Positions 4,315 to 64,000 of a stretch of DNA of 64,000 bases are shown piece by piece; within the stretch, counting starts at the first letter, position 1, and each line of letters opens with the position of its first letter. The position numbers were made by a program, and so were the translations under genes. Where the stretch lies: contig NIVC01001000.1 of NCBI GenBank assembly GCA_002269645.1, positions 62,001 to 126,000 on the forward strand. Reading direction: 5' to 3'. Below the pieces are notes generated by a model that was not told the DNA's origin, searched no databases, and worked only from the letters and a program-made list of their open reading frames with translations. This stretch comes from Macrostomum lignano. Its lineage: Eukaryota.

Positions 4315-13382
<9,068 letters not shown>

Positions 13383-38317: not shown

Positions 38318-38790
38318 TACCTAGTGGTTTTTCGAATTTCTCACGCTTTCGAATTTTTCGAAAACTGCTGCAGCTGAAAAAAACTCGACCAACTTGCTGA
38401 ACTTACTGAATATTTAATGACAGAGGCCCATGTCCTGAGCAAATGCTTTACGACAACAGAGCTCTGCATTCAACAGTTTACGTGGCCTATTAAGCCAATA
38501 AAAAAGCAGTGTCAAAACAAGACAAAAAACATTTAAACAAACCAATTAGTAAAGAAAACAACTAAAGTTCGCAATGTCACCAGTGTAATTTATAAATACA
38601 GGGGAGTAAAGTTTCGAGAGAACGCTTGATTGCAAAAAATTACAACGCAAGTTAAGGAGTCAAAGAAAAAGTTTAACTGCTGAGTACTTTTACAGTAAGC
38701 AATAAAATGATTGGGAAACAATTGGAAACCTTAGGCAGGAACACAAAGTAAAAAGCTGGTCTAGCAGTACAGTGCAGTATAGTGTAGCTA

Positions 38791-40075
38791 GTGTCACTAG
38801 CTGGTCGTTGAGTGCTGTCACTAACTGGTCGTTGAGTGCTGTCACTAACTGGTCATTAAGTGCTGTCATTAACTAGTCATTAAGTGCTGTCATTAACTAG
38901 TCATTGAGTGCTGTCACTAACTAGTCTTTGAGTGCTGTCACTAACTGGTCGTTGAGTGCTCTCAATAACTGTCATTAAATACTGTCACTAACTGGTCATT
39001 GAGTGCTGTCACTAACTGGTCATTGAGTGCTCTCAATAACTGGTCATTGATTGCTGTCACAAACTGGTCATTGAGTGCTGTCACTAACTAATCATTGAGT
39101 GCTGTCACTAACTGGTCATTGAGTGCTCTCAATAACTGGTCATTGATTGCTGTCACAAACTGGTCATTGAGTGCTGTCACTAAGTAATCATTGAGTGCTG
39201 TTACTAACTGGTCATTGATTGCTGTCCTAACGGGCCATTGAGGGCTGTCACTAAATGGTCATTGAGTGCTGTCACTAACTGGTCATTGAGTGCTGTCACT
39301 AACTGGTCATTGAGTGCTGTCACTAACTAGTCATTGAGTGCTGTCACTAACTGGTCATTGATTGCTGTCCTAACTCCTAACTGGTCATTGAGTGCTGTCA
39401 CTAACTGGTCGTTGAGTGCTGTCACTAACTGGTCATTGAGTGCTGTCACTAACTGGTCATTGAGTGCTGTCACTAACTTGTCATTGAGTGCTGTCACTAA
39501 CTGCTCATTGAGTGCTGTCACTAACTGGTCATTGAGTGCTGTCACTAACTGCTCATTGAGTGCTGTCACTAACTGGTCATTGAGTGCTGTCACTAACTGG
39601 TCGTTGAGTGCTGTCACTAACTGGTCATTGAGTGATGTCACTAACTGGTCATTGAGTGCTGTCACTAACTGGTCATTGAGTGCTGTCACTAACTGGTCAT
39701 TGAGTGCTGTCACTAACTGGTCATTAAATGCTGTCACTAACTGGTCATTAAGTGCTGTCACTAACTGGTCGTTGAGTGCTGTCACTAACTAGTCATTGAG
39801 TGCTGTCTCTAACTGGTCATTGAGTGCTGTCACTAACTGGTCATTGAGTGCTGTCACTAACTGGTCATTGAGTGCTGTCACTAACTGGTCATTGAGTGCT
39901 CTCACTGGCTGCTCATTGAGTGCTGTCACTAACTGGTCATTGAGTGCTCTCACTGACTGGTCATTAAGTGCTCTCACTGGCTGCTTATTGAGTGCTGTCA
40001 CTAACTGGTCATTGAGTGCTCTCACTGACTGGTCATTAAGTGCTGTCACTAACTGGCCATTAGGTGCTGTCTTTA
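38791..40075. repeat. 24-bp satellite array 1 (ACTAACTGGTCATTGAGTGCTGTC), about 53 units
   Basis: Read directly. Confidence 0.96.
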
Positions 40076-40310
40076 ATTGGATATTGGATTAGCTTCCGAA
40101 TGCTTTAAGAGAATTCAACAAAGTCCGAAGATCATGAATAAAACGACAAAACAGCTGCTAAAGGATTGCGAGCACACTAAAGACCAAGACCGATTGTGCA
40201 CGTCGGCAATGACGGAGCGCCGCAAGGGTGAATATTCGCTACAGAAAGTGCAGTCGGAGTGCTACTTAAGATTCTTGACTTGATTGAATTTCTTGCCGCA
40301 CACTTTGCAC

Positions 40311-41417
40311 TCAAATGGCTTTTCTTGTGTGGAGCCTTGAGTGCCTAGTAAGATGGCTGCTGTCACTGAATCTCTTGCCGCACACTTTGCACTCAAATGG
40401 CTTTTCTCCTGTGTGCAGCCTTGAGTGCCTAGTGAGATGGCTGCTGACACTGAATCTCTTGCCGCACACTTTGCACTCAAATAGCTTTTCTCCTGTGTGC
40501 TGCCTGGAGTGTCTAGTAAGGCTGCTGCTGACACTGAATCTCTTGCCGCATACTTTGCACTCAAATGGCTTTTCTCCTGTGTGCAGCCTTGAGTGCCTAG
40601 TGAGATGGCTGCTGACACTGAATCTCTTGCCGCACACTTTGCACTCATATGGCTTTTCTCCTGTGTGCTGCCTGGAGTGTGTAGTAAGGCTGCTGCTGAC
40701 ACTGAATCTCTTGCCGCACACTTTGCACTCAAATGGCTTTTCTCCTGTGTGCTGCCTGGAGTGTGTAGTAAGGCTGCTGCTGACACTGAATTTCTTGCCG
40801 CACACTTTGCACTCAAATGGCTTTTCTCCTGTGTGCAGCCTTGAGTGCGTTGTGAGATTGCTGCTGTCACTGAATCTCTTGCCGCACACCTTGCACTCAA
40901 ATGGCTTTTCTCCTGTATGCTGCCTGGAGTGTGTAGTAAGGCTGCTGCTGATACTGAATCTCTTGCCGCACACCTTGCACTCAAACGGTCTCTCACCAGT
41001 GTGAGACCGGCTGTGCACGTGCAGATCGTGTTTTGCTGAGAAGGACTTCCCACACCGCTTGCATTTGTGCGGTTTTGCCTTCCTGTGCACCACACTAATG
41101 TGAGCATTGAGATAGCTTCTCCTGGAGAACTTCTTTTGACAAGTGTCGCACTGGAACGGCTTCTGGAGACCCTGAGCACTATTTGTCACTGCACGACCGC
41201 CATCTGCACACGGCTTCATCGCTGACTCATTGCGAGACGCGACCTGCTCGACCGCCGCCGCTCTGCCAGCTTCTGAGTTGGTCGCAGCCGCCTCCTCAGG
41301 CTCCGAGTCGCGGCCAATTCCGTGTGACCGCACATGACGCAAGTACTGCGCCGCTGCCGGTCGGGTGCGGCAGAACCGCCTGGGACAAAACGGGCAGGCG
41401 ACAGAGCCCCGGCGCAT
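40311..41417 (-). CDS. C2H2 zinc-finger protein copy Z1 (368 aa): N-terminal atypical finger, 2 unique fingers and 8 84-bp repeat fingers
   Basis: ORF with repeated [25 protein letters not shown]. Confidence 0.88.
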
Positions 41418-42269
41418 CTCTGAGAAACTGTGGGCTACAATCCGTGCTGAGATGCCGATGCTCGAAGCCCGTCTCTGCCTTGAGCTGCAATGCGGAGCGA
41501 TAGAGACTTCGTCACTTTGTCATCCAAGTTTGAATGACGTTCAAAGATTTTTAAACACGTATTGTCAGAAGATTCCGTTTAATGATAAAGATAGTTGGGT
41601 ATTTTAGTATGGAGACAAAAGATTCAAGCATTCAATTTGCATCTGAATGCATTGAGGTTCATTTTAATGAATAAAGGCAAAAATATTTTTTAAACTTGTT
41701 TTTTGTAGCTACCCGTGCACCGAATTTCACTTATGTACTTTTTATGAAATTTCTCTTACAATACGTATGAATATACTCTTATTATCATTTGCTGCAAAAT
41801 TAACAAAACGAAATTGCTGACCCACGATTATATAACTGTAGTAGTCAGCATAGCAGCAGCAATTACGCAATTATTTGTCAGAAATGAAAACACACGGGGC
41901 GATTAAAGGATTTGCTGTTATATGCCCAAATAAAAAACACACATGGATGAGTTTACGTTGCCTATTAAGTCATTAAAAAAGCAATTAAAATATCCTGGCA
42001 AACATTTAAACAAACCAATTAGTAAAGAAAACAAGTAAAATTTGAATGCCACCGGTGTAATTTATAAATACAGGGGAGAAAAGGTTCGATAACAACGCTT
42101 GATTGCACAAAATTGAAACGCAAGTTAGGGAGTCAAAGAAAAAGTTTAAGTGCTAAGTACTTCTACAGTAAGTAATGAAATGATTGGGAAACAATTGGAT
42201 ACCTTTGGCAGGAAAACAAAGTAAAAAGCTGGTCTAGCAGTACAGTGCAGTATAGTATATGCAGTGCCT

Positions 42270-45200
42270 ACTGGTCATTGATTGCTGTCAGTGTCACTAA
42301 CTGGTCATTGAGTGCTGTCACTAACTGGTCTTTGAGTCCTGTCACTAACTGGTCATTGAGTGCTGTCACTAACTGGTCATTGAGTGCTGTCAATAACTGG
42401 TCATTGAGTGCTGTCACTAACTAGTCATTGAGTGCTGTCACTAACTGGTCATTGATTGCTGTCAGTGTCACTAACTGGTCATTGATTGCTGTCAGTGTCA
42501 CTAACTGGTCATTAAGTGCTGTCACTAACTGGTCGTTGAGTGCTGTCACTAACTGGTCATTGAGTGCTGTCACTAACTGGTCTTTGAGTGCTGTCACTAA
42601 CTGGTCATTGAGTGCTGTCACTAACTGGTTATTGAGTGCTGTCACTAACTGGTCATTGAGTGCTGTCACTAACTGGTCATCGAGTGCTGTCACTAACTGG
42701 TCATTGAGTGCTGTCACTAACTGGTCATTTAGTGATGTCACTAACTAGTCATTGAGTGCTGTCACTAACTGGTCATTGATTGCTGTCTCCAACTGGTCAT
42801 TGATTGCTGTCTCTAACTGGTCATTGAGTTCTGTCACTAATTGGTCATTGAGTGCTGTCACTAACTGGTCATTAAGTGCTGTCACTAACTGGTCATTGAG
42901 TGTTGTCACTAACTGCTCATTGAGTGCTGTCACTAACTGGTCATTGAGTGCTGTCACTAACTGGTCATCGAGTGCTGTCTATAACTGGTCATTAAGTGCT
43001 CTCACTAACTGGTCATTGAGTGATGTCACTAACTGGTCATTGAGTGATGTCACTAACTGGTCATTAAGTGCTGTCACTAACTGGTCATTGAGTGCTGTCA
43101 CTAACTGGTCATTAAGTGCTATCACTAACTAGTCATTAAGTGCTGTCACTAACTGGTCATTGAGTGTTGTCACTAACTGCTCATTGAGTGCTGTCACTAA
43201 CTGGTCATATATTGCTGTCAATACTTGGTCATTGAGTGCTGTCTATAACTGGTCTTTAAGTGCTCTCACTAACTGGTCATTGAGTGATGTCACTAACTGG
43301 TCATTGAGTGATGTCACTAACTGGTCATTAAGTGCTGTCACTAACTGGTCATTGAGTGCTGTCACTAACTGGTCATTAAGTGCTATCACTAACTAGTCAT
43401 TGAGTGCTGTCACTAACTGGTCATTAACTGCTGTCACTAACTGGTCATTGAGTGTTGTCACTAACTGCTCATTGAGTGCTGTCACTAACTGGTCCTATAT
43501 TGCTGTCAATACTTGGTCATTGAGTGCTGTCTATAACTGGTCATTAAGTGCTCTCACTAACTGGTCATTGAGTGATGTCACTAACTGGTCATTGAGTGAT
43601 GTCACTAACTGGTCATTAAGTGCTGTCACTAACTGGTCATTGAGTGCTGTCACTAACTAGTTATTGAGTGCTGTCACTAACTGGTCATTGATTGCTGTCT
43701 CTAACTGGTCATTGAGTTCTGTCACTAACTGGTCATTGAGTGCTGTCAGTAACTGGTCATTAAGTGCTGTCCTAACTGGTCATTGAGTGTTGTCACTAAC
43801 TGGTCATTGAGTGCTGTCACTAACTGGTCATATATTGCTGTCAATACTTGGTCATTGAGTGCTGTCTATAACTGGTCATTAAGTGCTGTCACTAACTGGT
43901 CATTGAGTGCTGTCACAAACTAGTCATTGAGTGCTATCACTAACTAGTCATTGAGTGCTGTCACTAACTGGTCATTAAGTGCTGTCACTAACTGGTCATT
44001 GAGTGTTGTCACTAACTGCTCATTGAGTGCTCTCACTAACTGGTCATTGAGTGATGTCACTAACTGGTCATTAAGTGCTGTCACTAACTGGTCATTGATT
44101 GCTGTCTCTAACTGGTCATTGAGTTCTGTCACTAACTGGTCATTGAGTGCTGTCACTAACTGGTCATTAAGTGCTGTCACTAACTGGTCATTGAGTGTTG
44201 TCACTAACTGCTCATTGAGTGCTGTCACTAACTGGTCATATATTGCTGTTAATACTTTGTCATTGAGTGCTGTCTATAACTGGTCATTAAGTGCTCTCAC
44301 TAACTGGTCATTGAGTGATGTCACTAACTGGTCATTGAGTGATGTCACTAACTGGTCATCAAGTGCTGTCACTAACTGGTCATTGAGTGCTGTAACTAAC
44401 TAGTTATTGAGTGCTGTCACAAACTGGTCATTGCGTGCTATAACTAACTAGTCATTAAGTGCTGTCACTAACTGGTCATTAAGTGCTGTCACTAACTGGT
44501 CTTTGATTGCTGTCTCTAACTGGTCATTGAGTTCTGTCACTAACTGGTCATTGAGTGCTGTCAGTAACTGGTCATTAAGTGCTGTCCTAACTGGTCATTG
44601 AGTGTTGTCACTAACTGGTCATTGAGTGCTGTCACTAACTGGTCATATATTGCTGTCAATACTTGGTCATTGAGTGCTGTCTATAACTGGTCATTAAGTG
44701 CTGTCACTAACTGGTCATTGAGTGCTGTCACAAACTAGTCATTGAGTGCTATCACTAACTAGTCATTGAGTGCTGTCACTAACTGGTCATTAAGTGCTGT
44801 CACTAACTGGTCATTGAGTGTTGTCACTAACTGCTCATTGAGTGCTCTCACTAACTGGTCATTGAGTGATGTCACTAACTGGTCATTAAGTGCTGTCACT
44901 AACTGGTCATTGATTGCTGTCTCTAACTGGTCATTGAGTTCTTTCACTAACTGCTCATTGAGTGCTGTCACTAACTGGTCATATATTGCTGTTAATACTT
45001 TGTCATTGAGTGCTGTCTATAACTGGTCATTAAGTGCTCTCACTAACTGGTCATTGAGTGATGTCACTAACTGGTCATTGAGTGATGTCACTAACTGGTC
45101 ATCAAGTGCTGTCACTAACTGGTCATTGAGTGCTGTAACTAACTAGTTATTGAGTGCTGTCACAAACTGGTCATTGCGTGCTATCACTAACTAGTCATTA

Positions 45201-45730
45201 AGTGCTGTCACTAACTGGTCATTAAGTGCTGTCACTAACTGGTCTTTGATTGCTGTCTCTAACTGGTCATTGAGTTTTGTCACTAACTGGTCATTGAGTG
45301 CTGTCACTAACTGGTCATTAAGTGCTGTCACTAACTGGTCATTGAGTGTTGTCACTAACTGGTCATTGAGTGCTGTCACTAACTGGTCATAAGTGGCTGT
45401 CAATACTTGGTCATTGAGTGCTGTCTATAACTGGTCATTGAGTGCTATCACTAACTAGTCATTGAGTGCTGTCACTAACTGGTCATTGAGTGCTGTCACT
45501 AACTAGTCATTAAATGCTGTTACTAACTGATCATTGAGTGCTGTCACTAACTGGTCATTGAGTGCTGTCACTAACTGATCATTGAGTGCTGTCACTAACT
45601 GGTCATTGAGTGCTGTCACTAACTAGTAATTGAGTGCTGTCACTAACTGGTCGAGTGCTGTCACTAAATGCTGTTACTTTGCACTTAGTAAGTGCTGTCA
45701 CTAACTGGTCATTAGGTGCTGTCACTATAT
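42270..45730. repeat. 24-bp satellite array 2, about 144 units, with higher-order repeats
   Basis: Read directly; diagnostic variant units recur. Confidence 0.96.
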
Positions 45731-45745
45731 GGTTATTGGATTAGC

Positions 45746-45981: not shown

Positions 45982-46064
45982 AGAATATATAAATCCTTCA
46001 GGCTTTCTAGGGCAAAAAGGAGGAGAATCCGAGGGCCGCGAAGCTGGCCTGCTGGATTTGTATT

Positions 46065-47026
46065 CCTTCTTGATTTTGCGGGCGGGCCGAGAAACGACAT
46101 TCTTCGGCCCGCAAGTCAAGTCAAACTGCATTCGCTTCAGTCTAAGTTCAGTGCAAGTCCTGATTCTCGGCCCGCAAGAAAATGGAATTTGTCTATGGTA
46201 CAAAATGCAAACTGTATTTCATTTTAGCTTGTAGTTCCGAGCCTAAAAGAGCGACTGACAAAGTATTAATTGGTCTAACTTTTTATTAAAATTTATTCAA
46301 TTGACTCCTGACCCGAACGTTCTGAGAAAATGATAGACTACTCCTGTATAGAAGGACGAGAGATTTCTGGGTTGCAGCGCGAAGAAATCGACTTTGTATG
46401 CCAACTCCGTGGCCGTGGGCGAATGTTCAATCGGTACACTTGCCTGTGCCTGGAATTGGATTCAGCAAGGCGCTCGAAAACGGCCTGTTGGATGCTCTAG
46501 TAAACGATCTTCTGCTGAAGTGAGCAGCGACAATCAACCCCGGAAGCTAACAAGTGATGAAGTGAGCGCCATTTTGGATGTGGAGAATGCCTCACGCGTC
46601 ATCTCTACCGAAGCAAAAAGCCTAATCCAATCGTTAAACCAGTCACGATCGAGCGATGTCCCACTTCAATCGCCTAGTTTTAGCGTTGAGCGTGGCAACC
46701 TAAAAGTATCTGCTGTTGACTGCGAACAAAGGGACTTTAATGGAGTTCTGCCGACTGCAGTGCTAGAGAAAAATAGATCCCGTGTTCTATTTTTCCTATA
46801 AGTGAGTACCTCTGAAAGCCACTTGGGCATTGAACTACCCTATGTACTGTAAAGTCGGAGTGGGTTGCACCACAAGACTATATTAAATCGTTACTGTTGT
46901 CCTCTGTGTAATGTTGCGATTTTAACGTTTTAAATACAATCGTTTCGGCTTCGTCTATGGCCCAGCCCGATATCGGGCAGAGAATAGGCCGTTTCTTAAG
47001 CAGTCTTGCCCGCAAAATCAAGCAGG
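46065..47026. mobile_element. Unclassified TIR element inserted in ZNF copy Z2
   Basis: CCTTCTTGATTTTGCGGGC at 46065 is inverted to GCCCGCAAAATCAAGCAGG ending at 47026. It interrupts the finger repeat; no direct TSD is visible. Confidence 0.6.
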
Positions 47027-48300
47027 AATGGCTTTTCTCCTGTATGCAGCATCGAGTGTGTTGCGAGGTTGCTGCTGTCACTGAATCTCTTGCTGCACAC
47101 TTTGCACTCAAATGGCTTTTCTCCTGTGTGCAGCATTAAGTGCCTAGTAAGATGGCTGCTGACACTGAATCTCTTGCCGCACACTTTGCACTCAAATGGC
47201 TTTTCTCCTGTGTGGAGCCTTGAGTGCCTAGTGAGATGGCTGCTGACACTGAATCTCTTGCCGCACACTTTGCACTCAAATGGCTTTTCTCCTGTGTGCT
47301 GCCTGGAGTGTGTAGTAAGGCTGCTGCTGTCACTGAATCTCTTGCTGCACACTTTGCACTCAAATGGCTTTTCTCCTGTGTGCAGCCTTAAGTGCCTAGT
47401 AAAATGGCTGCTGACACTGAATCTCTTGCCGCGCACTTTGCACTCAAATGGCTTTTCTCCTGTGTGCAGCCTTGAGTGCCTAGTGAGATGGCTGCTGACA
47501 CTAAATCTCTTGCCGCACACTTTGCACTCAAATGGCTTTTCTCCTGTATGCAGCCTGGAGTGTGTAGTAAGGCTGCTGCTGACACTGAATCTCTTGCCGC
47601 ACACCTTGCACCCAAATGGCTTTTCTCCTGTATGCAGCCTGGAGTGTGTAGTAAGGCTGCTGCTGTCACTGAATCTCTTGCCGCACACTTTGCACCCAAA
47701 TGGCTTTTCTCCTGTATGCAGCCTGGAGTGTGTAGTAAGATGGCTGCTGACACTGAATCTCTTGCCGCACACTTTGCTCTCAAATGGCTTTTCTCCTGTA
47801 TGCAGCCTGGAGTGTGTAGTAAGGCTGCTGCTGACACTGAATCTCTTGCCGCACACCTTGCACTCAAATGGTCTCTCACCAGTGTGAGACCGGCTGTGCA
47901 CGTGCAGATCGCGTTTTGCTGAGAAGGACTTTTCACACCGCTTGCATTTGTGCGGTGTTGCCTTCCTGTGCACCACACTAATGTGAGCATTGAGATAGCT
48001 TCTCCTGGAGAACTTCTTTTGACAAGTGTCGCACTGGAACGGCTTCTGGAGACCCTGAGCACGATTTGTCACTGCACGACTGCCATCTGTACACGGCTTC
48101 ATCGCTGACTCATTGCGAGACGCGACCTGCTCGACCGCCGCCGCTCTGCCAGCTTCTGAGTTGGTCGCAGCCGCCTCCTCAGGCTCCGAGTCGTAGCCAA
48201 TTCCGTGTGACCGCACATGACGCAAGTACTGCGCCGCTGCCGGTCGGGTGCGGCAGAACCGCCTGGGACAAAACGGGCAGGCGACAGAGCCCCGGCGCAT
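46996..48300 (-). CDS. C2H2 zinc-finger protein copy Z2 (434 aa; 10 repeat fingers, two with a lost Cys; C-terminus read into the insertion)
   Basis: The ORF has broken fingers ESKVC and CKVRG and ends HTGEKPFLLDFAGKTA* inside the inserted element. Confidence 0.75.
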   Translation of the reverse strand: MRRGSVACPFCPRRFCRTRPAAAQYLRHVRSHGIGYDSEPEEAAATNSEAGRAAAVEQVASRNESAMKPCTDGSRAVTNRAQGLQKPFQCDTCQKKFSRRSYLNAHISVVHRKATPHKCKRCEKSFSAKRDLHVHSRSHTGERPFECKVCGKRFSVSSSLTTHSRLHTGEKPFESKVCGKRFSVSSHLTTHSRLHTGEKPFGCKVCGKRFSDSSSLTTHSRLHTGEKPFGCKVCGKRFSVSSSLTTHSRLHTGEKPFECKVCGKRFSVSSHLTRHSRLHTGEKPFECKVRGKRFSVSSHFTRHLRLHTGEKPFECKVCSKRFSDSSSLTTHSRQHTGEKPFECKVCGKRFSVSSHLTRHSRLHTGEKPFECKVCGKRFSVSSHLTRHLMLHTGEKPFECKVCSKRFSDSSNLATHSMLHTGEKPFLLDFAGKTA

Positions 48301-49145: not shown

Positions 49146-49995
49146 CTGGTCATTGATTGCTGTCAGTGTCACTAACTGGTCATTGAGTGCTGTCACTAAC
49201 TGGTCATTGAGTGCTGTCACTAACTGGTCATTGAGTGCTGTCACTAACTGGTCATTGAGTGCTGTCACTAACTGGTCTTTGAGTCATGTCACTAACTGGT
49301 CATTGAGTGCTGTCACTAACTGGTCATTGAGTGCTGTCACTAACTGGTCATTGAGTGCTGTCACTAACTGGTCTTTGAGTGCTGTCACTAACTGGTCATT
49401 GAGTGCTGTCACTAACTGGTCATTGAGTGCTGTCACTAACTGGTCATTGAGTGCTGTCACTAACTGGTCTTTGAGTGCTGTCACTAACTGGTCTTTGAGT
49501 CCTGTCACTAACTGGTCATTGTGTGCTGTCACTAACTGGTCATTGAGTGCTGTCACTACCTGGTCTTCGAGTGCTGTCACTAACTGGTCATTGAGTGCTG
49601 TCACTACCTGGTCTTTGAGTGCTGTCACTAACTGCTCATTGAGTGCTGTCACTAACTGGTCATTGAGTGCTGTCACTAACTGGTCATTGAGTGCTGTCAC
49701 TAACTGGTCATTGAGTGCTGTCACTACCTGGTCTTTGAGTGCTGTCACTAACTGGTCATTAAGTGCTGTCACTAACTAGTCATTGAGTGCTGTCAATAAC
49801 TGGTCATTGAGTGCTGCCACTAACTAGTCATTGAGTGCTGTCTATAACTGGTCATTAAGTGCTGTCACAAACTAGTCATTGAGTGCTGTAACTAACTGGT
49901 CATTAAGTGCTGTCACAAACTAGTCATTGAGTGCTGTAACTAACTGGTCATTAAGTGCTGTCACTAACTGGCCATTAAGTTCTGTCACTAATTGG
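49146..49995. repeat. 24-bp satellite array 3, about 35 units
   Basis: Read directly. Confidence 0.96.
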
Positions 49996-50230: not shown

Positions 50231-51502
50231 TCAAATGGCTTTTCTTGTGTGGAGCCTTGAGTGCCTGGTAAGATGGCTGCTGTCACTGAATCTCTTGCCG
50301 CACACTTTGCACTCAAATGGCTTTTCTCCTGTGTGCAGCCTTGAGTGCCTAGTGAGATGGCTGCTGACACTGAATCTCTTGCTGCACACTTTGCACTCAA
50401 ATGGCTTTTCTCCTGTGTGCTGCCTTAAGTGCCCAGTAAGATGGCTGCTGTCACTGAATCTCTTGCCGCACACTTTGCACTCAAATGGCTTTTCTCCTGT
50501 GTGCAGCCTTGAGTGCGTTGTGAGATTGCTGCTGTCACTGAATCTCTTGCCGCATACTTTGCACTCAAACGGCTTTTCTCCTGTGTGCTGCCTGGAGTGT
50601 GTAGTAAGGCTGCTGCTGACACTGAATCTCTTGCCGCACACTTTGCACTCAAATGGCTTTTCTCCTGTGTGCAGCCTTGAGTGCCTAGTGAGATGGCTGC
50701 TGACACTGAATCTCTTGCCGCACACTTTGCACTCAAACGGCTTTTCTCCTGTGTGCTGCCTGGAGTGTGTAGTAAGGCTGCTGCTGACACTGAATCTCTT
50801 GCCGCACACTTTGCACTCAAATGGCTTTTCTCCTGTATGCAGCCTGGAGTGTGTAGTAAGGCTGCTGCTGACACTGAATCTCTTGCCGCACACTTTGCAC
50901 TCAAATGACTTTTCTCCCGTGTGCAGCCTGGAGTGTGTAGTAAGGCTGCTGCTGTCACTGAATCTCTTGCCACACACTTTGCACTCAAATGGCTTTTCTC
51001 CTGTGTGCTGCCTGGAGTGTGTAGTAAGGCTGCTGCTGTCACTGAATCTCTTGCCGCACACCTTGCACTCAAACGGTCTCTCACCAGTGTGAGACCGGCT
51101 GTGCAAGTGCAGATCGGGTTTCGCTGAGGACTTCCCACACCGCTTGCATTTGTGCGGTGTTGCCTTCCTGTGCACCACACTAATGTGAGCATTGAGATAG
51201 CTTCTCCTGGAGAACTTCTTTTGACAAGTGTCGCACTGGAACGGCTTCTGGAGACCCTGAGCACGATTTGTCACTGCACGACTGCCATCTGTACACGGCT
51301 TCATCGCTGACTCATTGCGAGACGCGACCTGCTCGACCGCCGCCGCTCTGCCAGCTTCTGAGTTGGTCGCAGCCGTCTCCTCAGGCTCCGAGTCGTAGCC
51401 AATTCCGTGTGACCGCACATGACGCAAGTATTGCGCCGCTGCCGGTCGGGTGCGGCAGAACCGCCTGGGACAAAACGGGCAGGCGACAGAGCCCCGGCGC
51501 AT
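50231..51502 (-). CDS. C2H2 zinc-finger protein copy Z3 (423 aa; 10 repeat fingers)
   Basis: ORF with repeated C2H2 fingers; the second unique finger lacks its Phe (GKSSAKPDL). Confidence 0.88.
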
Positions 51503-53114: not shown

Positions 53115-53167
<53 letters not shown>

Positions 53168-53330: not shown

Positions 53331-53391
<61 letters not shown>

Positions 53392-53910: not shown

Positions 53911-53941
53911 CTAATTTTGACGATGAGACGCTCTTGAACTA

Positions 53942-55117: not shown

Positions 55118-56762
55118 AGTGTCACTAGCTGGTCGTTGAGTGCTGTCACTAACTGGTCGTTGAGTGCTGTCACTAACTGGTCATTAAGTGCTGTCATTAA
55201 CTAGTCATTAAGTGCTGTCATTAACTAGTCATTGAGTGCTGTCACTAACTAGTCTTTGAGTGCTGTCACTAACTGGTCATTGATTGCTCTCAATAACTGT
55301 CATTAAATACTGTCACTAACTGGTCATTGAGTGCTGTCACTAACTGGTCATTGAGTGCTCTCAATAACTGGTCATTGATTGCTGTCACAAACTGGTCATT
55401 GAGTGCTGTCACTAACTAATCATTGAGTGCTGTCACTAACTGGTCATTGAGTGCTCTCAATAACTGGTCATTGATTGCTGTCACAAACTGGTCATTGAGT
55501 GCTGTCACTAAGTAATCATTGAGTGCTGTTACTAACTGGTCATTGATTGCTGTCCTAACGGGCCATTGAGGGCTGTCACTAAATGGTCATTGAGTGCTGT
55601 CACTAACTGGTCATTGAGTGCTGTCACTAACTGGTCATTGAGTGCTGTCACTAACTAGTCATTGAGTGCTGTCACTAACTGGTCATTGAGTGATGTCACT
55701 AACTGGTCGTTGAGTGCTGTCACTAACTGGTCATTGAGTGATGTCACTAACTGGTCATTGAGTGCTGTCACTAACTAGTCATTAAGTGCTCTCACTAACT
55801 AGTAATTGAGTGCTGTCACTAACTAGTCATTAGGTGCTCTCACTAACTAGTCATTTAGTGCTGTCACTAACTGGTCATTAAGTGCTGTCACTAACTGGTC
55901 ATTAAGTGCTGTCACTAACTGGTAATTGATTGCTGTCCTAACTGGTCATTGAGTGCTGTCACTAACTAGTCATTAGGTGCTCTCACTAACTATTCATTTA
56001 GTGCTGTCACTAACTGGTCATTGAGTGATGTCACTAACTGGTCATTGATTGCTGTCCTAACTGGTCATTAAGTGCTGTCACTAAGTGGTCATTAAGTGCT
56101 GTCACTAAGTGGTCATTAAGTGCTGTCACTAAGTGGTCATTAAGTGCTGTCACCAACTAGTCATTGAGTGCTGTCACTAACTAATCATTGAGTGCTGTCA
56201 ATAACTGGTCATTGAGTGCTGTCACTAACTGGTCAGTGAGTGCTGTCACTAACTGTTCATTGAGTGCTGTCACTAACTGGTCATTGATTGCTGTCCTAAC
56301 TCCTAACTGGTCATTGAGTGCTGTCACTAACTGGTCGTTGAGTGCTGTAACTAACTGGTCATTGAGTGCTCTCACTGACTGGTCATTAAGTGCTCTCACT
56401 GGCTGCTTATTGAGTGCTGTCACTAACTGGTCATTGAGTGCTGTCACTAACTGGTCATTGAGTGCTGTCACTAACTGGTCGTTGAGTGCTGTCACTAACT
56501 AGTCATTGAGTGCTGTCTCTAACTGGTCATTGAGTGCTGTCACTAACTGGTCGTTGAGTGCTGTCACTAACTGGTCATTGAGTGCTCTCACTGGCTGCTC
56601 ATTGAGTGCTGTCACTAACTGGTCATTGAGTGCTCTCACTGACTGGTCATTAAGTGCTCTCACTGGCTGCTTATTGAGTGCTGTCACTAACTGGTCATTG
56701 AGTGCTCTCACTGACTGGTCATTAAGTGCTGTCACTAACTGGCCATTAGGTGCTGTCTTTAA
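55118..56762. repeat. 24-bp satellite array 4, about 68 units
   Basis: Read directly. Confidence 0.96.
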
Positions 56763-56996
56763 TTGGATATTGGATTAGCTTCCGAATGCTTTAAGAGAAT
56801 TCAACAAAGTCCGAAGATCATGAATAAAACGACAAAACAGCTGCTAAAGGATTGCGAGCACACTAAAGACCAAGACCGATTGTGCACGTCGGCAATGACG
56901 GAGCGCCGCAAGGGTGAATATTCGCTACAGAAAGTGCAGTCGGAGTGCTACTTAAGATTCTTGACTTGATTGAATTTCTTGCCGCACACTTTGCAC

Positions 56997-58103
56997 TCAA
57001 ATGGCTTTTCTTGTGTGGAGCCTTGAGTGCCTAGTAAGATGGCTGCTGTCACTGAATCTCTTGCCGCACACTTTGCACTCAAATGGCTTTTCTCCTGTGT
57101 GCAGCCTTGAGTGCCTAGTGAGATGGCTGCTGACACTGAATCTCTTGCCGCACACTTTGCACTCAAATAGCTTTTCTCCTGTGTGCTGCCTGGAGTGTCT
57201 AGTAAGGCTGCTGCTGACACTGAATCTCTTGCCGCATACTTTGCACTCAAATGGCTTTTCTCCTGTGTGCAGCCTTGAGTGCCTAGTGAGATGGCTGCTG
57301 ACACTGAATCTCTTGCCGCACACTTTGCACTCATATGGCTTTTCTCCTGTGTGCTGCCTGGAGTGTGTAGTAAGGCTGCTGCTGACACTGAATCTCTTGC
57401 CGCACACTTTGCACTCAAATGGCTTTTCTCCTGTGTGCTGCCTGGAGTGTGTAGTAAGGCTGCTGCTGACACTGAATTTCTTGCCGCACACTTTGCACTC
57501 AAATGGCTTTTCTCCTGTGTGCAGCCTTGAGTGCGTTGTGAGATTGCTGCTGTCACTGAATCTCTTGCCGCACACCTTGCACTCAAATGGCTTTTCTCCT
57601 GTATGCTGCCTGGAGTGTGTAGTAAGGCTGCTGCTGATACTGAATCTCTTGCCGCACACCTTGCACTCAAACGGTCTCTCACCAGTGTGAGACCGGCTGT
57701 GCACGTGCAGATCGTGTTTTGCTGAGAAGGACTTCCCACACCGCTTGCATTTGTGCGGTTTTGCCTTCCTGTGCACCACACTAATGTGAGCATTGAGATA
57801 GCTTCTCCTGGAGAACTTCTTTTGACAAGTGTCGCACTGGAACGGCTTCTGGAGACCCTGAGCACTATTTGTCACTGCACGACCGCCATCTGCACACGGC
57901 TTCATCGCTGACTCATTGCGAGACGCGACCTGCTCGACCGCCGCCGCTCTGCCAGCTTCTGAGTTGGTCGCAGCCGCCTCCTCAGGCTCCGAGTCGCGGC
58001 CAATTCCGTGTGACCGCACATGACGCAAGTACTGCGCCGCTGCCGGTCGGGTGCGGCAGAACCGCCTGGGACAAAACGGGCAGGCGACAGAGCCCCGGCG
58101 CAT
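56997..58103 (-). CDS. C2H2 zinc-finger protein copy Z4 (368 aa, protein identical to Z1)
   Basis: The ORF translation is identical to 40311-41417. Confidence 0.88.
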
Positions 58104-58956: not shown

Positions 58957-59755
58957 CTGGTCATTGATTGCTGTCAGTGTCACTAACTGGTCATTGAGTG
59001 CTGTCACTAACTGGTCGTTGAGTGCTGTCAATAACTGGTCATTGAGTGCTGTCACTAACTGGTCGTTGAGTGCTGTCAATAACTGGTCATTGAGTGCTGT
59101 CACTAACTGGTCATTGAGTGCTGTCTCTAACTGGTCATTGAGTGATGTCACTAACTGGTCATTGAGTGCTGTCACTAACTGGTCATTGAGTGCTGTCTCT
59201 AACTGGTCATTGAGTGCTGTCACTAACTGGTCGTTGAGTGCTGTCACTAACTGGTCATTGAGTGATGTCACTAACTGGTCATTGAGTGCTGTCACTAACT
59301 GGTCATTGAGTGCTGTCACTAACTGGTCATTGAGTGCTGTCACTAACTGGTCATTGAGTGCTGTCACTAACTGGTCATTGAGTGCTGTCACTAACTGGTC
59401 ATTAAATGCTGTCACTAACTGGTCATTAAGTGCTGTCACTAACTGGTCGTTGAGTGCTGTCACTAACTAGTCATTGAGTGCTGTCTCTAACTGGTCATTG
59501 AGTGCTGTCACTAACTGGTCATTGAGTGCTGTCACTAACTGGTCATTGAGTGCTGTCACTAACTGGTCATTGAGTGCTCTCACTGGCTGCTCATTGAGTG
59601 CTGTCACTAACTGGTCATTGAGTGCTCTCACTGACTGGTCATTAAGTGCTCTCACTGGCTGCTTATTGAGTGCTGTCACTAACTGGTCATTGAGTGCTCT
59701 CACTGACTGGTCATTAAGTGCTGTCACTAACTGGCCATTAGGTGCTGTCTTTAAT
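58957..59755. repeat. 24-bp satellite array 5, about 33 units
   Basis: Read directly. Confidence 0.96.
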
Positions 59756-59988
59756 TGGATATTGGATTAGCTTCCGAATGCTTTAAGAGAATTCAACAAA
59801 GTCCGAAGATCATGAATAAAACGACAAAACAGCTGCTAAAGGATTGCGAGCACACTAAAGACCAAGACCGATTGTGCACGTCGGCAATGACGGAGCGCCG
59901 CAAGGGTGAATATTCGCTACAGAAAGTGCAGTCGGAGTGCTACTTAAGATTCTTGACTTGATTGAATTTCTTGCCGCACACTTTGCAC

Positions 59989-61095
59989 TCAAATGGCTTT
60001 TCTTGTGTGGAGCCTTGAGTGCCTAGTAAGATGGCTGCTGTCACTGAATCTCTTGCCGCACACTTTGCACTCAAATGGCTTTTCTCCTGTGTGCAGCCTT
60101 GAGTGCCTAGTGAGATGGCTGCTGACACTGAATCTCTTGCCGCACACTTTGCACTCAAATAGCTTTTCTCCTGTGTGCTGCCTGGAGTGTCTAGTAAGGC
60201 TGCTGCTGACACTGAATCTCTTGCCGCATACTTTGCACTCAAATGGCTTTTCTCCTGTGTGCAGCCTTGAGTGCCTAGTGAGATGGCTGCTGACACTGAA
60301 TCTCTTGCCGCACACTTTGCACTCATATGGCTTTTCTCCTGTGTGCTGCCTGGAGTGTGTAGTAAGGCTGCTGCTGACACTGAATCTCTTGCCGCACACT
60401 TTGCACTCAAATGGCTTTTCTCCTGTGTGCTGCCTGGAGTGTGTAGTAAGGCTGCTGCTGACACTGAATTTCTTGCCGCACACTTTGCACTCAAATGGCT
60501 TTTCTCCTGTGTGCAGCCTTGAGTGCGTTGTGAGATTGCTGCTGTCACTGAATCTCTTGCCGCACACCTTGCACTCAAATGGCTTTTCTCCTGTATGCTG
60601 CCTGGAGTGTGTAGTAAGGCTGCTGCTGTCACTGAATCTCTTGCCGCACACCTTGCACTCAAACGGTCTCTCACCAGTGTGAGACCGGCTGTGCACGTGC
60701 AGATCGTGTTTTGCTGAGAAGGACTTCCCACACCGCTTGCATTTGTGCGGTTTTGCCTTCCTGTGCACCACACTAATGTGAGCATTGAGATAGCTTCTCC
60801 TGGAGAACTTCTTTTGACAAGTGTCGCACTGGAACGGCTTCTGGAGACCCTGAGCACTATTTGTCACTGCACGACCGCCATCTGCACACGGCTTCATCGC
60901 TGACTCATTGCGAGACGCGACCTGCTCGACCGCCGCCGCTCTGCCAGCTTCTGAGTTGGTCGCAGCCGCCTCCTCAGGCTCCGAGTCGCGGCCAATTCCG
61001 TGTCACCGCACATGACGCAAGTACTGCGCCGCTGCCGGTCGGGTGCGGCAGAACCGCCTGGGACAAAACGGGCAGGCGACAGAGCCCCGGCGCAT
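59989..61095 (-). pseudogene. C2H2 zinc-finger copy Z5 with an early nonsense codon (TCA to TGA at 61005-61003); an internal ATG at 60897 leaves a 302-aa frame
   Basis: Plus strand reads GTGTCACCG here versus GTGTGACCG in all other copies. It is otherwise Z1/Z4-like, with finger 1 having I to D at position -1. Confidence 0.75.
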
Positions 61096-61949: not shown

Positions 61950-62272
61950 CTGGTCATTGATTGCTGTCAGTGTCACTAACTGGTCATTGAGTGCTGTCAC
62001 TAACTGCTCATTGAGTGCTGTCACTAACTGGTCATTGAGTGCTGTCACTAACTGGTCATTGAGTGCTGTCACTAACTGGTCATTGAGTGCTGTCACTAAC
62101 TGGTCATTGAGTGCTGTCACTAACTGGTCATTGAGTGCTGTCACTAACTGGTCATTGAGTGCTGCCACTAACTGGTCATTGAGTGCTGTCACTAACTGGT
62201 CATTGAGTGTTTTCATTAACTGGTCATTAAGTGCTGTCACTAACTGGCCATTAGGTTCTGTCACTAATTGGA
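61950..62272. repeat. 24-bp satellite array 6, about 13 units
   Basis: Read directly. Confidence 0.95.
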
Positions 62273-62506
62273 TATCGGATTAGCTTCCGAATGCATCACT
62301 TTAAGAGAATTCAACAAAGTCCGAATATCATGAATAAAACGACAAAACAGCTGCTAAAGGATTCCGAGCACACTAAAGACCAAGACCGATTGTGCACGTC
62401 GGCAATGACGGAGCGCCGCAAGGGTGAATATTCGCTACAGAAAGTGCAGTCGGAGTGCCACTTAAGATTGTTGACTTGATTGAATTTCTTGCCGCACACT
62501 TTGCAC

Positions 62507-63613
62507 TCAAATGGCTTTTCTTGTGTGGAGCCTTGAGTGCCTGGTAAGATGGCTGCTGTCACTGAATCTCTTGCCGCACACTTTGCACTCAAATGGCTTT
62601 TTTTGTCCTGTGTGCAGCCTTGAGTGCTTAGTGAGACAGCTGCTGACACTGAATCTCTTGCCGCACACTTTGCACTCAAACGGCTTTTCTCCTGTATGCT
62701 GCCTTAAGTGCCTAGTCAGATGGCTGCTGTCACTGAATCTCTTGCCGCACACTTTGCACTCAAATGGCTTTTCTCCTGTGTGCTGCCTGGAGTGCTTAGT
62801 GAGACAGCTGCCGTCACTGAATCTCTTGCCGCACACTTTGCACTCAAATGGCTTTTCTCCTGTATGCAGCCTTGAGTGCCTAGTGAGATGGCTGCTGTCA
62901 CTGAATCTCTTGCCGCATACTTTGCACTCAAATGGCTTTTCTCCTGTATGCAGCCGTGAGTGCCTAGTGAGATGGCTGCTGTCACTGAATCTCTTGCCGC
63001 ATACTTTGCACTCAAATGGCTTTTCTCCTGTATGCAGCCTGGAGTGTGTAGTAAGATGACTGCTGACACTGAATATCTTGCCGCACACTTTGCACTCAAA
63101 TGGCTTTTCTCTTGTGTGCAGTCTGGAGTGTGTAGTAAGGCTGCTGCTGTCACTGAATCTCTTGCCGCACAACTTGCACTCAAATGGTCTCTCACCAGTG
63201 TGAGACCGGCTGTGCACGTGCAGATCGGGTTTCGCTGAGGACTTCCCACACCGCTTGCATTTGTGCGGTGTTGCCTTCCTGTGCACCACACTAATGTGAG
63301 CATTGAGATAGCTTCTCCTGGAGAACTTCTTTTGACAAGTGTCGCACTGGAACGGCTTCTGGAGACCCTGAGCACTATTTGTCACTGCACGACCGCCATC
63401 TGCACACGGCTGCATCGCTGACTCATTGCGAGACGCGACCTGCTCGACCGCCGCCGCTCTGCCAGCTTCTGAGTTGGTCGCAGCCGCCTCCTCAGGCTCC
63501 GAGTCGCGGCCAATTCCGTGTGACCGCACATGACGCAAGTACTGCGCCGCTGCCGGTCGGGTGCGGCAGAACCGCCTGGGACAAAACGGGCAGGCGACAG
63601 AGCCCCGGCGCAT
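62507..63613 (-). CDS. C2H2 zinc-finger protein copy Z6 (368 aa; 8 repeat fingers including novel DGSCLTK/VSSCLTK helices)
   Basis: ORF with repeated C2H2 fingers; shares the Phe-less second finger with Z3. Confidence 0.88.
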
Positions 63614-64000
63614 CTCTGAGAAACTGTGGGGCTACAATCCGTGCTGAGATGCCGATGCTCGAAGCCCGTCTCTGCCTTGAGCTGCAATGCGGAGCGATAG
63701 AGACTTCGTCACTTTGTCATCCAAGTTTGAATGACGTTCAAAGATTTTTAATCACGTATTGTCAGAAGATTCCGTTTAATTATAAAGATAGTTGGGTATT
63801 TTAGTATGGAGACAAAATATTTAAGCATTCGATTTGCATCTGAATGCATTGAGGTTCATATTGAAAGAACAAAGGCAATTTTTTTTTTCAATTATTTTTT
63901 CTACCCATGCACCGAATTTCACCAATGTACTTTTTTAAGACATTAGCATGTGAAATTTCTCTTACAATACGTATGAATATACTCGTATTATCATTAGCTG

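What the first reader, a model, noticed from the sequence alone, without database searches (positions are those of the whole stretch)
38470..64000. Six tandem cassettes that each pair a C2H2 zinc-finger gene with its own 24-bp satellite array
Seen: on the minus strand the unit is [AT-rich spacer/upstream region, about 650 bp] then [single-exon ZNF gene with about 11-13 fingers] then [24-bp satellite array]. It repeats six times (ATGs at 41417, 48300, 51502, 58103, 61095, 63613). Both array junctions are conserved (CTAGCAGTACAGTGCAGTATAGT.. on one side, ..TAATTGGATATTGGATTAGCTT on the other), while array length varies from about 13 to 144 units. Gene and satellite therefore amplify as one module. 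Established: poly-C2H2 arrays read about 3 bp per finger, and four of the six copies have 8 repeat fingers (8x3 = 24 bp, the satellite period). Inference: this could be a self-contained binder-plus-binding-site system, for example autoregulation, satellite heterochromatin nucleation, a decoy sink or a drive-like selfish cassette. A hand reading of the recognition code gives Z1 roughly GGC GGT GYT GGT NYT NYT NAC NYN, which matches the satellite only partly (e.g. GCT GTC ACT AAC under F5-F2), so binding is not established. I know of no described system with this architecture, but I could not search.
Basis: partly seen in the sequence, partly recalled or inferred. Interest (0 to 1): 0.8.

Follow-up and report, generated by a model that had tools for sequence, protein, structure and literature searches.

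The report
Duplicated zinc-finger genes carrying a passenger minisatellite
A flatworm (Macrostomum lignano) zinc-finger gene that acquired a 24-bp minisatellite just past its stop codon was copied six times in tandem, so the gene-plus-satellite pairing comes from ordinary local duplication in a very repeat-rich genome, and nothing tested here suggests the protein binds its own satellite.

Summary
There are six minus-strand cassettes, each with a C2H2 zinc-finger (ZNF) gene, about 240 bp of flank, a 24-bp array of 12.5 to about 142 units, and a spacer. Both array junctions are conserved.

The "binder plus its own binding site" reading is not supported.
- The window is Macrostomum lignano, and 28-34% of the other 37 kb is minisatellite.
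- Cassettes 1, 4 and 5 are 99.1-99.5% identical outside their arrays, so "four copies with 8 fingers" is really two independent cases. Z2 and Z3 have 10 repeat fingers.
- A rough recognition-code matrix and a code-free test both score the satellite no better than shuffled 24-mers.
- Only Z1, which is identical to Z4, looks intact. Z5 has a nonsense codon, Z2 carries a transposon and two broken fingers, and Z3 and Z6 have a deletion in one finger.
- About 30 paralogous gene copies lack the array. One of them has a single-copy proto-unit at the homologous site.
- A diverged paralogue that is a pseudogene still keeps a homogeneous array at that site.
- A sister cluster carries an unrelated 21/42-bp satellite, roughly one per three genes.

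Best explanation: the minisatellite arose in the 3' flank, was copied by tandem duplication, and then changed length quickly. The closest precedent is the human 19p12 ZNF/beta-satellite cluster. Interest is low.

The parts
40311..41417 (-). Z1: intact 368-aa C2H2 poly-zinc-finger gene. It has an atypical N-terminal CCHH motif, 2 unique fingers and 8 repeat fingers encoded by 84-bp repeats, and ends HTRKAI*.
   Evidence: Pfam zf-C2H2 and zf-H2C2_2, 9 stretches each; none of the 25 families shown of 40 hits is KRAB, SCAN, BTB or ZAD
38792..40071 (.). Array A1: 24-bp minisatellite, 53 units, starting about 240 bp 3' of the Z1 stop codon.
   Evidence: It shares its first 570 bp and last 204 bp with A4.
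46996..48300 (-). Z2: 434-aa copy with 10 repeat fingers. Two fingers have lost a zinc-binding Cys (FESKVC, KVRGKRF), and the C-terminus is replaced by transposon sequence.
46062..47029 (.). Non-autonomous DNA transposon of about 970 bp with 22-nt terminal inverted repeats, inserted in the 3' end of Z2. This is why Z2 lies 1258 bp from its array.
   Evidence: arms 46062-46083 and 47008-47029, 95% complementary
42292..45737 (.). Array A2: 24-bp minisatellite, about 142 units.
50231..51502 (-). Z3: 423-aa copy with 10 repeat fingers and a one-residue deletion in unique finger 3 ([13 protein letters not shown], spacing C-x11-H).
49167..49995 (.). Array A3: 34.5 units.
56997..58103 (-). Z4: protein identical to Z1.
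   Evidence: Its non-array DNA is 99.5% identical to cassette 1.
55120..56757 (.). Array A4: 68 units. It equals A1 with an internal difference of 358 bp (about 15 units).
59989..61095 (-). Z5: a Z1-type copy with a nonsense codon at position 31 (HVR*HG). The longest ORF restarts at Met67 (60897).
58978..59749 (.). Array A5: 32 units. It equals the gene-proximal 778 bp of A1 at 97% identity.
62507..63613 (-). Z6: 368-aa copy with 8 repeat fingers whose contact residues differ from Z1 (DSHR-rich, plus two xSCK fingers). It has the same finger-3 deletion as Z3.
61971..62271 (.). Array A6: 12.5 units.
40072..40310 (-). Pre-array 3' flank of cassette 1; equivalents exist in all cassettes. Its start still encodes a frameshifted extra finger ([16 protein letters not shown]). 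It is homologous to the 3' flank of array-less paralogues.
38475..38791 (-). Post-array segment of about 345 bp. Copies lie at 41950-42291, 48826-49166, 54802-55119, 58637-58977 and 61629-61970. It is also homologous to paralogue flanks.
41418..41949 (-). Upstream segment of about 530 bp. Copies lie at 48301-48825, 51503-52041, 58104-58636, 61096-61628 and 63614-64000 (cut by the window end). Only the last ~130 bp before the ATG is shared with the wider gene family.
37586..38474 (.). Distal flank of cassette 1, duplicated at 53913-54801 (99.5%) as the distal flank of cassette 4. It begins with ancestral 3' flank and then holds a foldback, mariner-like transposon remnant.

Best explanation
The locus is a young tandem cluster of a Macrostomum-restricted Krueppel-type C2H2 zinc-finger gene family. 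The 24-bp satellite is a passenger minisatellite, not a cognate binding site.

**Proposed history**
1. In the ancestor of this subfamily, a stretch of roughly 20-27 bp about 240 bp past the stop codon was amplified in place into a minisatellite. This step is inferred; a precursor sequence is visible in a paralogue.
2. Unequal exchange then duplicated a unit made of about 530 bp upstream, the gene, about 240 bp, the array and about 345 bp. That produced the cassettes and explains why both array junctions are identical. The anatomy shows this directly.
3. A block containing cassette 1 and its distal flank was copied again very recently, giving cassettes 4 and 5. This is also shown.
4. Arrays gain and lose units by slippage or unequal sister-chromatid exchange much faster than point mutations accumulate. 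Arrays of 53, 68 and 32 units sit between flanks that are 99.1-99.5% identical. This is shown.
5. The gene copies follow birth-and-death evolution. Only Z1 (identical to Z4) is fully intact. This is shown.

What the ZNF proteins do is unknown. Sequence-specific DNA binding at other targets, such as the abundant transposons, is the default expectation for a family like this, and that is inference only.
For: **Organism and family.** The N-terminal [19 protein letters not shown] region is found only in Macrostomum lignano proteins.

**Repeat background.** 19-20 separate minisatellite arrays cover 28-34% of window 1-37500. The six other M. lignano loci carry 2-6 arrays per 20-28 kb. The genome is reported as 15% simple and tandem repeats (PMC5730564). 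A 3-6 kb duplication unit is therefore likely to include an array by chance.

**Cassette relationships.** Cassettes 1, 4 and 5 are 99.1-99.5% identical. The others are 93-94% identical to them. Flank 37586-38821 matches 53913-55149 at 99.5%.

**Arrays were copied and then changed.** A1 and A4 share both ends. A5 equals the gene-proximal part of A1 at 97%.

**Paralogues without the array.**
- About 30 family gene copies in L001-L006 lack the array, although their 3' flanks align on both sides of the array site.
- At that site L003 has a single copy, CAATTACCAGTTGGTTACA, matching the unit at 16 of 19 positions. None of 1000 shuffled units scores as well.

**Array beside a dead gene.** L006 has 28.7 units at the same homologous site, next to a 5'-truncated, frameshifted, stop-containing paralogue with different fingers.

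**A second, unrelated satellite.** The sister cluster (L002-L005) co-amplifies a 21/42-bp satellite lying 1.0-1.2 kb 3' of one gene in roughly three.

**No predicted match.**

**Damaged copies.**
Against: - The array has persisted at the same site through about 20% flank divergence (L006 versus the window) and stays fairly homogeneous. This could reflect some constraint rather than ordinary turnover.
- The recognition-code test uses my own rough table. The fingers are rich in Ser, Val and Thr at contact positions, where the canonical code is least reliable.
- Binding in trans by other family members was not tested.
- Only about 131 kb of other M. lignano sequence was examined, so the genome-wide distribution of the satellite is unknown.
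- The proto-unit match is significant only in L003. In L002 and L004 about 15-18% of shuffles score as well.
Confidence: 0.8

Rival explanations
1. Each ZNF, or the subfamily acting in trans, binds the adjacent 24-bp satellite, with 8 fingers reading 8 x 3 bp. The result would be an autoregulatory, heterochromatin-nucleating, decoy or drive-like module.
For: - Gene and array are always linked within the window.
- Four copies have 8 repeat fingers.
- The array also lies beside a family member at the same site in a second contig.
Against: - The predicted target is G-rich (GGC GGn Gnn GGn ... for Z1), whereas the satellite has one GG per unit. Its best score is -3.3 of 23.3 bits and is matched by 91% of shuffles. 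The other copies behave similarly.
- The code-free triplet-consistency test is no better than shuffles.
- Z2 and Z3 have 10 repeat fingers. Contact residues differ between Z1 and Z6 while the satellite stays the same.
- Three of the four 8-finger copies are 99% duplicates of one another.
- Z2 and Z5 are disrupted.
- The L006 array sits beside a pseudogene with different fingers.
- The sister cluster pairs with a 21/42-bp satellite at one per about three genes.
- Other minisatellites in the window have periods from 12 to 48 bp, so 24 is not special.
Confidence: 0.05
2. The array is a cis element of the gene that works without binding by its own product. It might be part of a long 3' UTR, a source of small RNAs, or a chromatin boundary that dampens expression or ectopic recombination in the cluster.
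For: - The array position, about 240 bp past the stop codon, is fixed.
- No canonical poly(A) signal is conserved between the stop codon and the array across the six cassettes. Transcripts could therefore run into the array.
- The array persists at this site in a diverged paralogue.
Against: - About 30 paralogues lack an array at this site.
- Array length varies 11-fold between near-identical cassettes, which argues against a dosage-sensitive role.
- No RNA family was detected.
- No expression data were available.
Confidence: 0.07
3. Part of the structure is an assembly artefact. The near-identical cassettes 1, 4 and 5 would be haplotypes or homeologues of one cassette, wrongly laid out in tandem in a difficult, neopolyploid, repeat-rich genome.
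For: - Cassettes 1, 4 and 5 are 99.1-99.5% identical, including an 889-bp distal flank.
- M. lignano assemblies are known to be redundant (PMC5730564).
Against: - The arrays of cassettes 1, 4 and 5 differ in length and internal structure in an orderly way.
- Cassettes 2, 3 and 6 are clearly distinct at 93-94% identity.
- Independent contigs of another assembly show the same dense tandem arrangement for this family.
Confidence: 0.05
4. The cassette is a mobile element, for example a Helitron-like or other transposon that captured a ZNF gene and carries an internal satellite, and it inserted repeatedly.
For: - The unit has sharp, reproducible boundaries at 41949/41950 and equivalent positions.
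- Transposon remnants lie nearby.
Against: - All copies are head-to-tail at a single locus.
- No terminal inverted or long terminal repeats bound the unit, and it encodes no transposase.
- The sequence beyond the distal boundary of cassette 1 is still homologous to the 3' flank of paralogues. The boundary is therefore a duplication breakpoint and not an element end.
Confidence: 0.02

Closest known systems
Human 19p12 KRAB-ZNF cluster interspersed with beta-satellite (Eichler et al. 1998, Genome Res 8:791). I saw it only as cited and summarised in PMC3018141 and PMC2443715, not in the original.
   Same: ZNF genes and blocks of tandem repeat are amplified together by tandem segmental duplication, so satellite blocks recur at regular positions within a ZNF cluster. 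The satellite is taken to be part of the duplication unit and not a target of the proteins.
   Different: - Scale: units of about 3-6 kb carrying a 24-bp minisatellite here. From my memory of that paper, the human units are on the order of 100 kb or more and carry 68-bp beta-satellite.
- Genes: the human genes are multi-exon KRAB-ZNFs. These are apparently single-exon and lack a KRAB domain.
- Origin of the repeat: beta-satellite is a genome-wide family. This 24-mer appears to have arisen locally in the gene's own 3' flank.
ZNF274/KAP1/SETDB1 marking of the 3' ends of human ZNF genes (Frietze et al. 2010, PMC2999557)
   Same: It is a real case of a zinc-finger protein binding repeated sequence at the 3' ends of clustered ZNF genes.
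   Different: - There the target lies within the finger-coding 3' exons, not in a separate non-coding satellite.
- One KRAB-ZNF acts in trans on many genes.
- Here no effector domain was detected, no match between fingers and satellite is predicted, and no binding data exist.
Ordinary minisatellites (VNTRs) inside segmental duplications (e.g. PMC2812944, seen in the listing by title and abstract only)
   Same: Units of 10-100 bp lie head to tail, arrays contain variant units, and copy number changes quickly between recently duplicated paralogous copies.
   Different: Nothing essential differs. The distinctive points here are that the repeat lies just outside the coding sequence, and that its birth from a single-copy precursor can be seen by comparing paralogues.
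Mouse MMSAT4 'satellite', which is really arrays of KZFP gene units (Kauzlaric et al. 2017, PMC5363842)
   Same: It shows that ZNF clusters are so repetitive, with 84-bp finger repeats and tandem gene copies, that they have themselves been classed as satellites.
   Different: In the mouse case the 'satellite' is the finger-coding DNA itself. Here there is also a separate non-coding 24-bp array.

Membership tests
Krueppel-type C2H2 poly-zinc-finger proteins | Tandem C-x2-C-x12-H-x3-H fingers | tested here: met
   Pfam zf-C2H2 (E = 5e-55, 9 stretches) and zf-H2C2_2 (E = 7e-75) for Z1. Fingers were parsed.
Krueppel-type C2H2 poly-zinc-finger proteins | Conserved TGEKP(F/Y) linkers between fingers | tested here: met
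   [16 protein letters not shown] recurs between all repeat fingers.
KRAB-, SCAN-, BTB- or ZAD-ZNF subfamilies | An N-terminal effector domain of that type | tested here: not met
   The Pfam scan of Z1 returned 40 families, of which the best 25 are shown. All 25 are zinc-finger or zinc-ribbon type, apart from low-scoring partial hits to DUFs, DNA_ligase_OB_2 and C1_2. None is KRAB, SCAN, BTB or ZAD. Residues 1-85 match only Macrostomum proteins.
Macrostomum lignano '[16 protein letters not shown]' ZNF family (unnamed, lineage-restricted) | Shared N-terminal region and 5' leader, arranged in tandem clusters | tested here: met
   - Protein identity of 63-75% to BOX15_Mlig partial proteins.
- The first 236 nt of the CDS are mostly 92-95% identical to the copies in L001-L006 that carry it; one L005 copy is 88% and a few align only as longer stretches at lower identity. 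The ~130 bp before the ATG is also conserved.
- 2-9 copies per 20-28 kb locus.
ZNF cluster with co-amplified satellite (19p12 type) | Satellite blocks recur at a fixed position inside a tandemly duplicated unit that contains ZNF genes | tested here: met
   Six arrays have identical junctions within units that are 93-99.5% identical.
ZNF cluster with co-amplified satellite (19p12 type) | The satellite belongs to a family that is widespread elsewhere in the genome | not testable with these tools
   No searchable M. lignano genome was available. The unit was found in one of six other loci and, in the window, only in the arrays. A protein search with the array translation found nothing.
   Rough matrix: best scores of -6.5 to -0.5 bits against a possible 23-31. 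Between 39% and 96% of shuffled-unit arrays score as well. The code-free test was also negative. Caveat: the code table is my own and approximate.
   The satellite consensus is the same beside genes with 8 or 10 repeat fingers and different contact residues. It is also the same beside a pseudogene in L006.
   This needs ChIP or CUT&RUN, EMSA or SELEX, and RNA-seq. The only indirect hint of transcription is that the partial paralogue proteins recorded in NCBI read through sequence upstream of the ATG.
Minisatellite / VNTR | A 10-100 bp unit, head-to-tail arrays with variant units, and rapid copy-number change | tested here: met
   The period is 24 bp with 88-94% matches between units. Only 16-58% of units are exact consensus. 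Arrays of 53, 68 and 32 units lie between flanks that are 99.1-99.5% identical.
Transposable-element cassette | Defined termini (TIR or LTR, with target-site duplication) and dispersed copies | tested here: not met
   Copies occur only head to tail. Homology to paralogue flanks continues past the distal boundary. No terminal repeats bound the unit.

The most novel reading that the evidence does not exclude
One or more members of this Macrostomum ZNF family bind the 24-bp array in trans through non-canonical finger-DNA contacts, and likewise the 21/42-bp array in the sister cluster. They would then seed repressive chromatin at the 3' ends of their own gene clusters. That would be an invertebrate, KRAB-independent counterpart of the ZNF274 system, one that limits expression or ectopic recombination in the cluster.
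Probability: 0.05. Interest if true: 0.65.

Novelty: new member of a known kind. Interest (0 to 1): 0.18.

Why it matters
As it stands, this is an ordinary product of tandem segmental duplication in an exceptionally minisatellite-rich genome. Its value is descriptive.

- It gives a clean example of a minisatellite being born from a single-copy flank sequence and then inherited through successive gene duplications.
- It gives an internal measure of how much faster array length changes than point substitutions accumulate: arrays of 32 to 68 units at 0.5-0.9% flank divergence.
- It documents a large, lineage-restricted C2H2 family in a regeneration model organism that evolves by birth and death.

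The locus would matter more broadly only if binding to the arrays were shown experimentally.

Tried and rejected
- **Protein search with the two open frames of the satellite** ((LVTALNDQ)n and (SAVTNWSL)n), meant to reach other contigs that carry the array. Nothing was found. This is uninformative, because repeat filters and the lack of gene calls across arrays could both explain it.
- **Exact look-up of Z1 in the contig index.** Not on record, so the window's own assembly could not be extended.
- **Rfam scan of the whole window.** No hits.
- **Poly(A) signal that would place the array inside or outside the 3' UTR.** The ATTAAA at the array edge occurs only in the cassette 1/4/5 type and is a variant of the first degenerate unit. 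It is not conserved in C3, C6 or L006.
- **Selection analysis on the N-terminal coding region.** There are too few substitutions for a meaningful pN/pS (1 synonymous versus 7 non-synonymous). The only clear result is that the coding sequence diverges about ten times less than the upstream DNA.
- **Proto-unit test in L002 and L004.** Not significant on its own, with 15-18% of shuffles scoring as well.
- **Mobile-element reading of the cassette.** Rejected because flank homology with paralogues runs through the supposed terminus.
- **Eichler 1998.** The paper could not be opened, so it is cited only through papers that summarise it.

Full report

Yes. Tandem Repeats Finder reports six arrays with the same 24-bp consensus, TGTCACTAACTGGTCATTGAGTGC:

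| Array | Coordinates | Units |
|---|---|---|
| A1 | 38792-40071 | 53 |
| A2 | 42292-45737 | about 142 |
| A3 | 49167-49995 | 34.5 |
| A4 | 55120-56757 | 68 |
| A5 | 58978-59749 | 32 |
| A6 | 61971-62271 | 12.5 |

On the minus strand each array lies downstream of an ORF that starts at the stated ATG with [16 protein letters not shown] and continues into Krueppel-type fingers. Pfam confirms the C2H2 fingers; none of the 25 best families shown, out of 40 hits, is a KRAB, SCAN, BTB or ZAD domain. No unit-like 24-mer lies outside the arrays.

Some details need correcting:
- The spacer from an ATG to the next array is about 875 bp, made of about 530 bp plus about 345 bp.
- The run of cassettes is interrupted between C3 and C4 by about 3.6 kb of other sequence.
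- The six copies are not independent.

**2. Anatomy of the cluster**

I masked the arrays and compared the window with itself.
- Cassettes 1, 4 and 5 are 99.1-99.5% identical: 40042-42321 matches 56728-59007 and 59720-62000.
- Cassettes 2, 3 and 6 are 93-94% identical to these.
- The distal flank of cassette 1 (37586-38821) is repeated at 53913-55149 at 99.5%.

The repeated unit is therefore about 530 bp upstream, the gene, about 240 bp, the array and about 345 bp. Its breakpoints are sharp, at 41949/41950 and the equivalent positions. The array lies inside the unit, not at its edges.

Array variant patterns show that the arrays were copied along with the genes and then changed. A1 and A4 share their first 570 bp and last 204 bp and differ by 358 bp in the middle. 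A5 equals the gene-proximal 778 bp of A1 at 97%. Array length therefore changes far faster than point substitutions accumulate.

**3. State of the genes**

| Copy | Repeat fingers | Condition |
|---|---|---|
| Z1 = Z4 | 8 | Intact, 368 aa |
| Z5 | 8 | Z1 type with a nonsense codon at position 31 |
| Z2 | 10 | Two fingers have lost a Cys ligand; C-terminus replaced by a ~970-bp element with 22-nt terminal inverted repeats (46062-47029) |
| Z3 | 10 | One-residue deletion in the third finger |
| Z6 | 8 | Same finger-3 deletion as Z3; contact residues unlike Z1 |

All copies also have two or three further N-terminal fingers. The statement "four of six have 8 repeat fingers" is true. It reduces, however, to two independent gene types (Z1 type and Z6) against two with ten fingers.

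**4. Organism and family**

The best matches with the same N-terminal region are all partial Macrostomum lignano proteins. One UniRef entry (P0092) looks like an error-ridden version of this very gene type. The window therefore comes from M. lignano or a very close relative.

The rest of the window fits that genome. It holds a young gypsy element, a fibrinogen-domain gene, exons resembling TTC7 (my reading of the ORF translations, not tested) and 19-20 different minisatellite arrays. Those arrays cover 28-34% of the first 37.5 kb. The published genome is 15% simple and tandem repeats (PMC5730564).

**5. Related loci**

I fetched six contig segments of assembly GCA_002269645.1 that carry family members. 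They hold about 30 gene copies in dense tandem clusters.

- **L001-L005:** none has the 24-bp satellite. Their 3' flanks nevertheless align with the window's sequence on both sides of the array site.
- **L003:** at the array site it has a single copy, CAATTACCAGTTGGTTACA, matching the unit at 16 of 19 positions. None of 1000 shuffled units scores as well. In L002 and L004 the resemblance is weaker.
- **L006:** it has the satellite (28.7 units, 96-98% to the window consensus) at exactly the homologous site. Its flanks are only roughly 75-84% identical to the window's over the stretches that align. The adjacent gene is a pseudogene: it is 5'-truncated and frameshifted, has a stop inside a finger, and its finger contact residues are different.
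- **L002-L005:** they repeatedly carry an unrelated 21/42-bp satellite 1.0-1.2 kb downstream of one gene in about three.

Co-duplication of a ZNF gene with a nearby minisatellite has therefore happened at least twice in this family, each time with a different repeat.

**6. Does the protein plausibly read the satellite?**

I used a rough canonical recognition code of my own, based on helix positions -1, 3 and 6.
- Z1 predicts GGC GGn Gnn GGn nnn nnn nAC nnn. The satellite has one GG per unit.
- The best satellite score is -3.3 bits of a possible 23.3, and 91% of shuffled 24-mer arrays do as well or better.
- Z2, Z3, Z5 and Z6 give the same picture.

I also ran a code-free test. Fingers with identical contact residues should face identical triplets. 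In every register and on both strands the satellite is no better than shuffles.

These are weak predictors for fingers rich in Ser, Val and Thr. They still give no support to the binding idea.

**7. Interpretation**

The most economical account is as follows.
- A minisatellite arose in place in the 3' flank of one family member.
- It was inherited through tandem duplications, the latest of them very recent.
- It changes length by slippage or unequal exchange.
- The gene copies meanwhile diversify and decay.

The conserved junctions, the shared array substructure, the array-less paralogues with a precursor sequence, the array beside a dead gene and the high background density of minisatellites all fit this account.

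The constant consensus across diverged arrays needs no selection. A majority consensus of many units stays ancestral, and turnover keeps arrays homogeneous.

**8. Rivals**

- **Binder plus site (0.05).** Contradicted by sections 3, 5 and 6, but not excluded without binding data.
- **Cis-regulatory or 3'-UTR role (0.07).** No conserved poly(A) signal lies between the stop codon and the array, so transcripts may enter it. However, most paralogues lack the array, and its length varies 11-fold.
- **Partial assembly artefact for cassettes 1, 4 and 5 (0.05).**
- **Mobile cassette (0.02).** Homology with paralogue flanks continues past the distal boundary.

**9. Comparison with known systems**

- The closest precedent for the architecture is the human 19p12 ZNF cluster interspersed with beta-satellite. 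I know it here only through citing papers.
- The genes meet the definition of Krueppel-type C2H2 poly-ZNFs and fail that of KRAB, SCAN, BTB or ZAD subfamilies.
- The array meets the definition of a minisatellite.

**10. Verdict**

The idea that the module is duplicated as a unit is supported. The functional binder-site idea is unsupported. This is a new instance of a known kind of structure and is of low general interest.

Noticed in passing
window 1-37500: Minisatellite density is extraordinary. There are 19-20 unrelated arrays with periods of 12-48 bp, plus long (ACAG)n and (TCAG)n tracts. Together they cover about 28-34% of the sequence, and many lie in apparent introns of the TTC7-like gene.
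   Followed up: partly
window 16428-21323 (minus strand): A young, apparently intact Ty3/gypsy LTR retrotransposon. It has a 1140-aa protease-RT-RNaseH-integrase ORF (17043-20465), a gag ORF with a zinc knuckle (20357-21034), and 117-nt direct repeats at 16428-16544 and 21207-21323 that are 99% identical.
   Followed up: partly
window 52474-52720 (minus strand): A terminal exon of a Sec1-family gene lies between cassette blocks C3 and C4 (Pfam Sec1 positions 522-573 of 575, E = 1e-10). It has a stop codon and a downstream AATAAA. Its upstream exons would have to lie beyond cassettes 4-6. So either the ZNF block sits inside an intron, or this exon is an orphan fragment.
   Followed up: partly
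window 37586-38474 and 53913-54801: A foldback transposon remnant with nested inverted repeats of 60 and 51 nt. It encloses a fragment reading ...EDNCSAH...LKRWGKCVATGRDYVEK, which looks to me like the C-terminus of a mariner/Tc1 transposase. I did not test this against a profile.
   Followed up: partly
window 46062-47029: An element of about 970 bp with 22-nt terminal inverted repeats (ATTCCTTCTTGATTTTGCGGGC) is inserted in the 3' end of Z2. No other copy occurs in the window or in the six fetched loci.
   Followed up: partly
window Z1-Z6 N-terminal CDS; L001-L006: The first ~236 nt of the coding sequence are mostly 92-95% identical to the distant paralogue copies that carry it, while the flanks are about 75-85% identical. 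Within the window, synonymous divergence (about 0.011) is ten times lower than upstream non-coding divergence (about 0.11). This suggests gene conversion or constraint at the nucleotide level on the 5' part of the gene.
   Followed up: partly
window 40262-40330 and equivalents; L002 ~10800-10900: All window copies except the transposon-truncated Z2 end HTRKAI*, because a 2-nt loss in a TGEKP linker shifts the frame. The following finger ([16 protein letters not shown]) is still readable out of frame. In paralogues L002-L006 that last finger is in frame (...NQGSHLK.H....HIV*). P0062, a protein from another contig, shares the RKAI ending.
   Followed up: partly
L002 1083-3065 and 12063-13174; L003 7586-7932; L004 5678-6554 and 17305-19293; L005 16490-17244; L006 3772-4905: A second minisatellite family of 21/42 bp (CTCTCCCTAGCCACCCTATCACTCACCCAAACCACCCTAAGA) recurs 1.0-1.2 kb downstream of particular ZNF copies in sister clusters. 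A possibly related 21-mer lies in L006. The 3' flank of this gene family appears prone to forming minisatellites.
   Followed up: partly
window 22113-22802 (minus strand): An ORF encoding a fibrinogen C-terminal globular domain (Pfam PF00147, E = 2.5e-32) lies next to the gypsy element.
   Followed up: no
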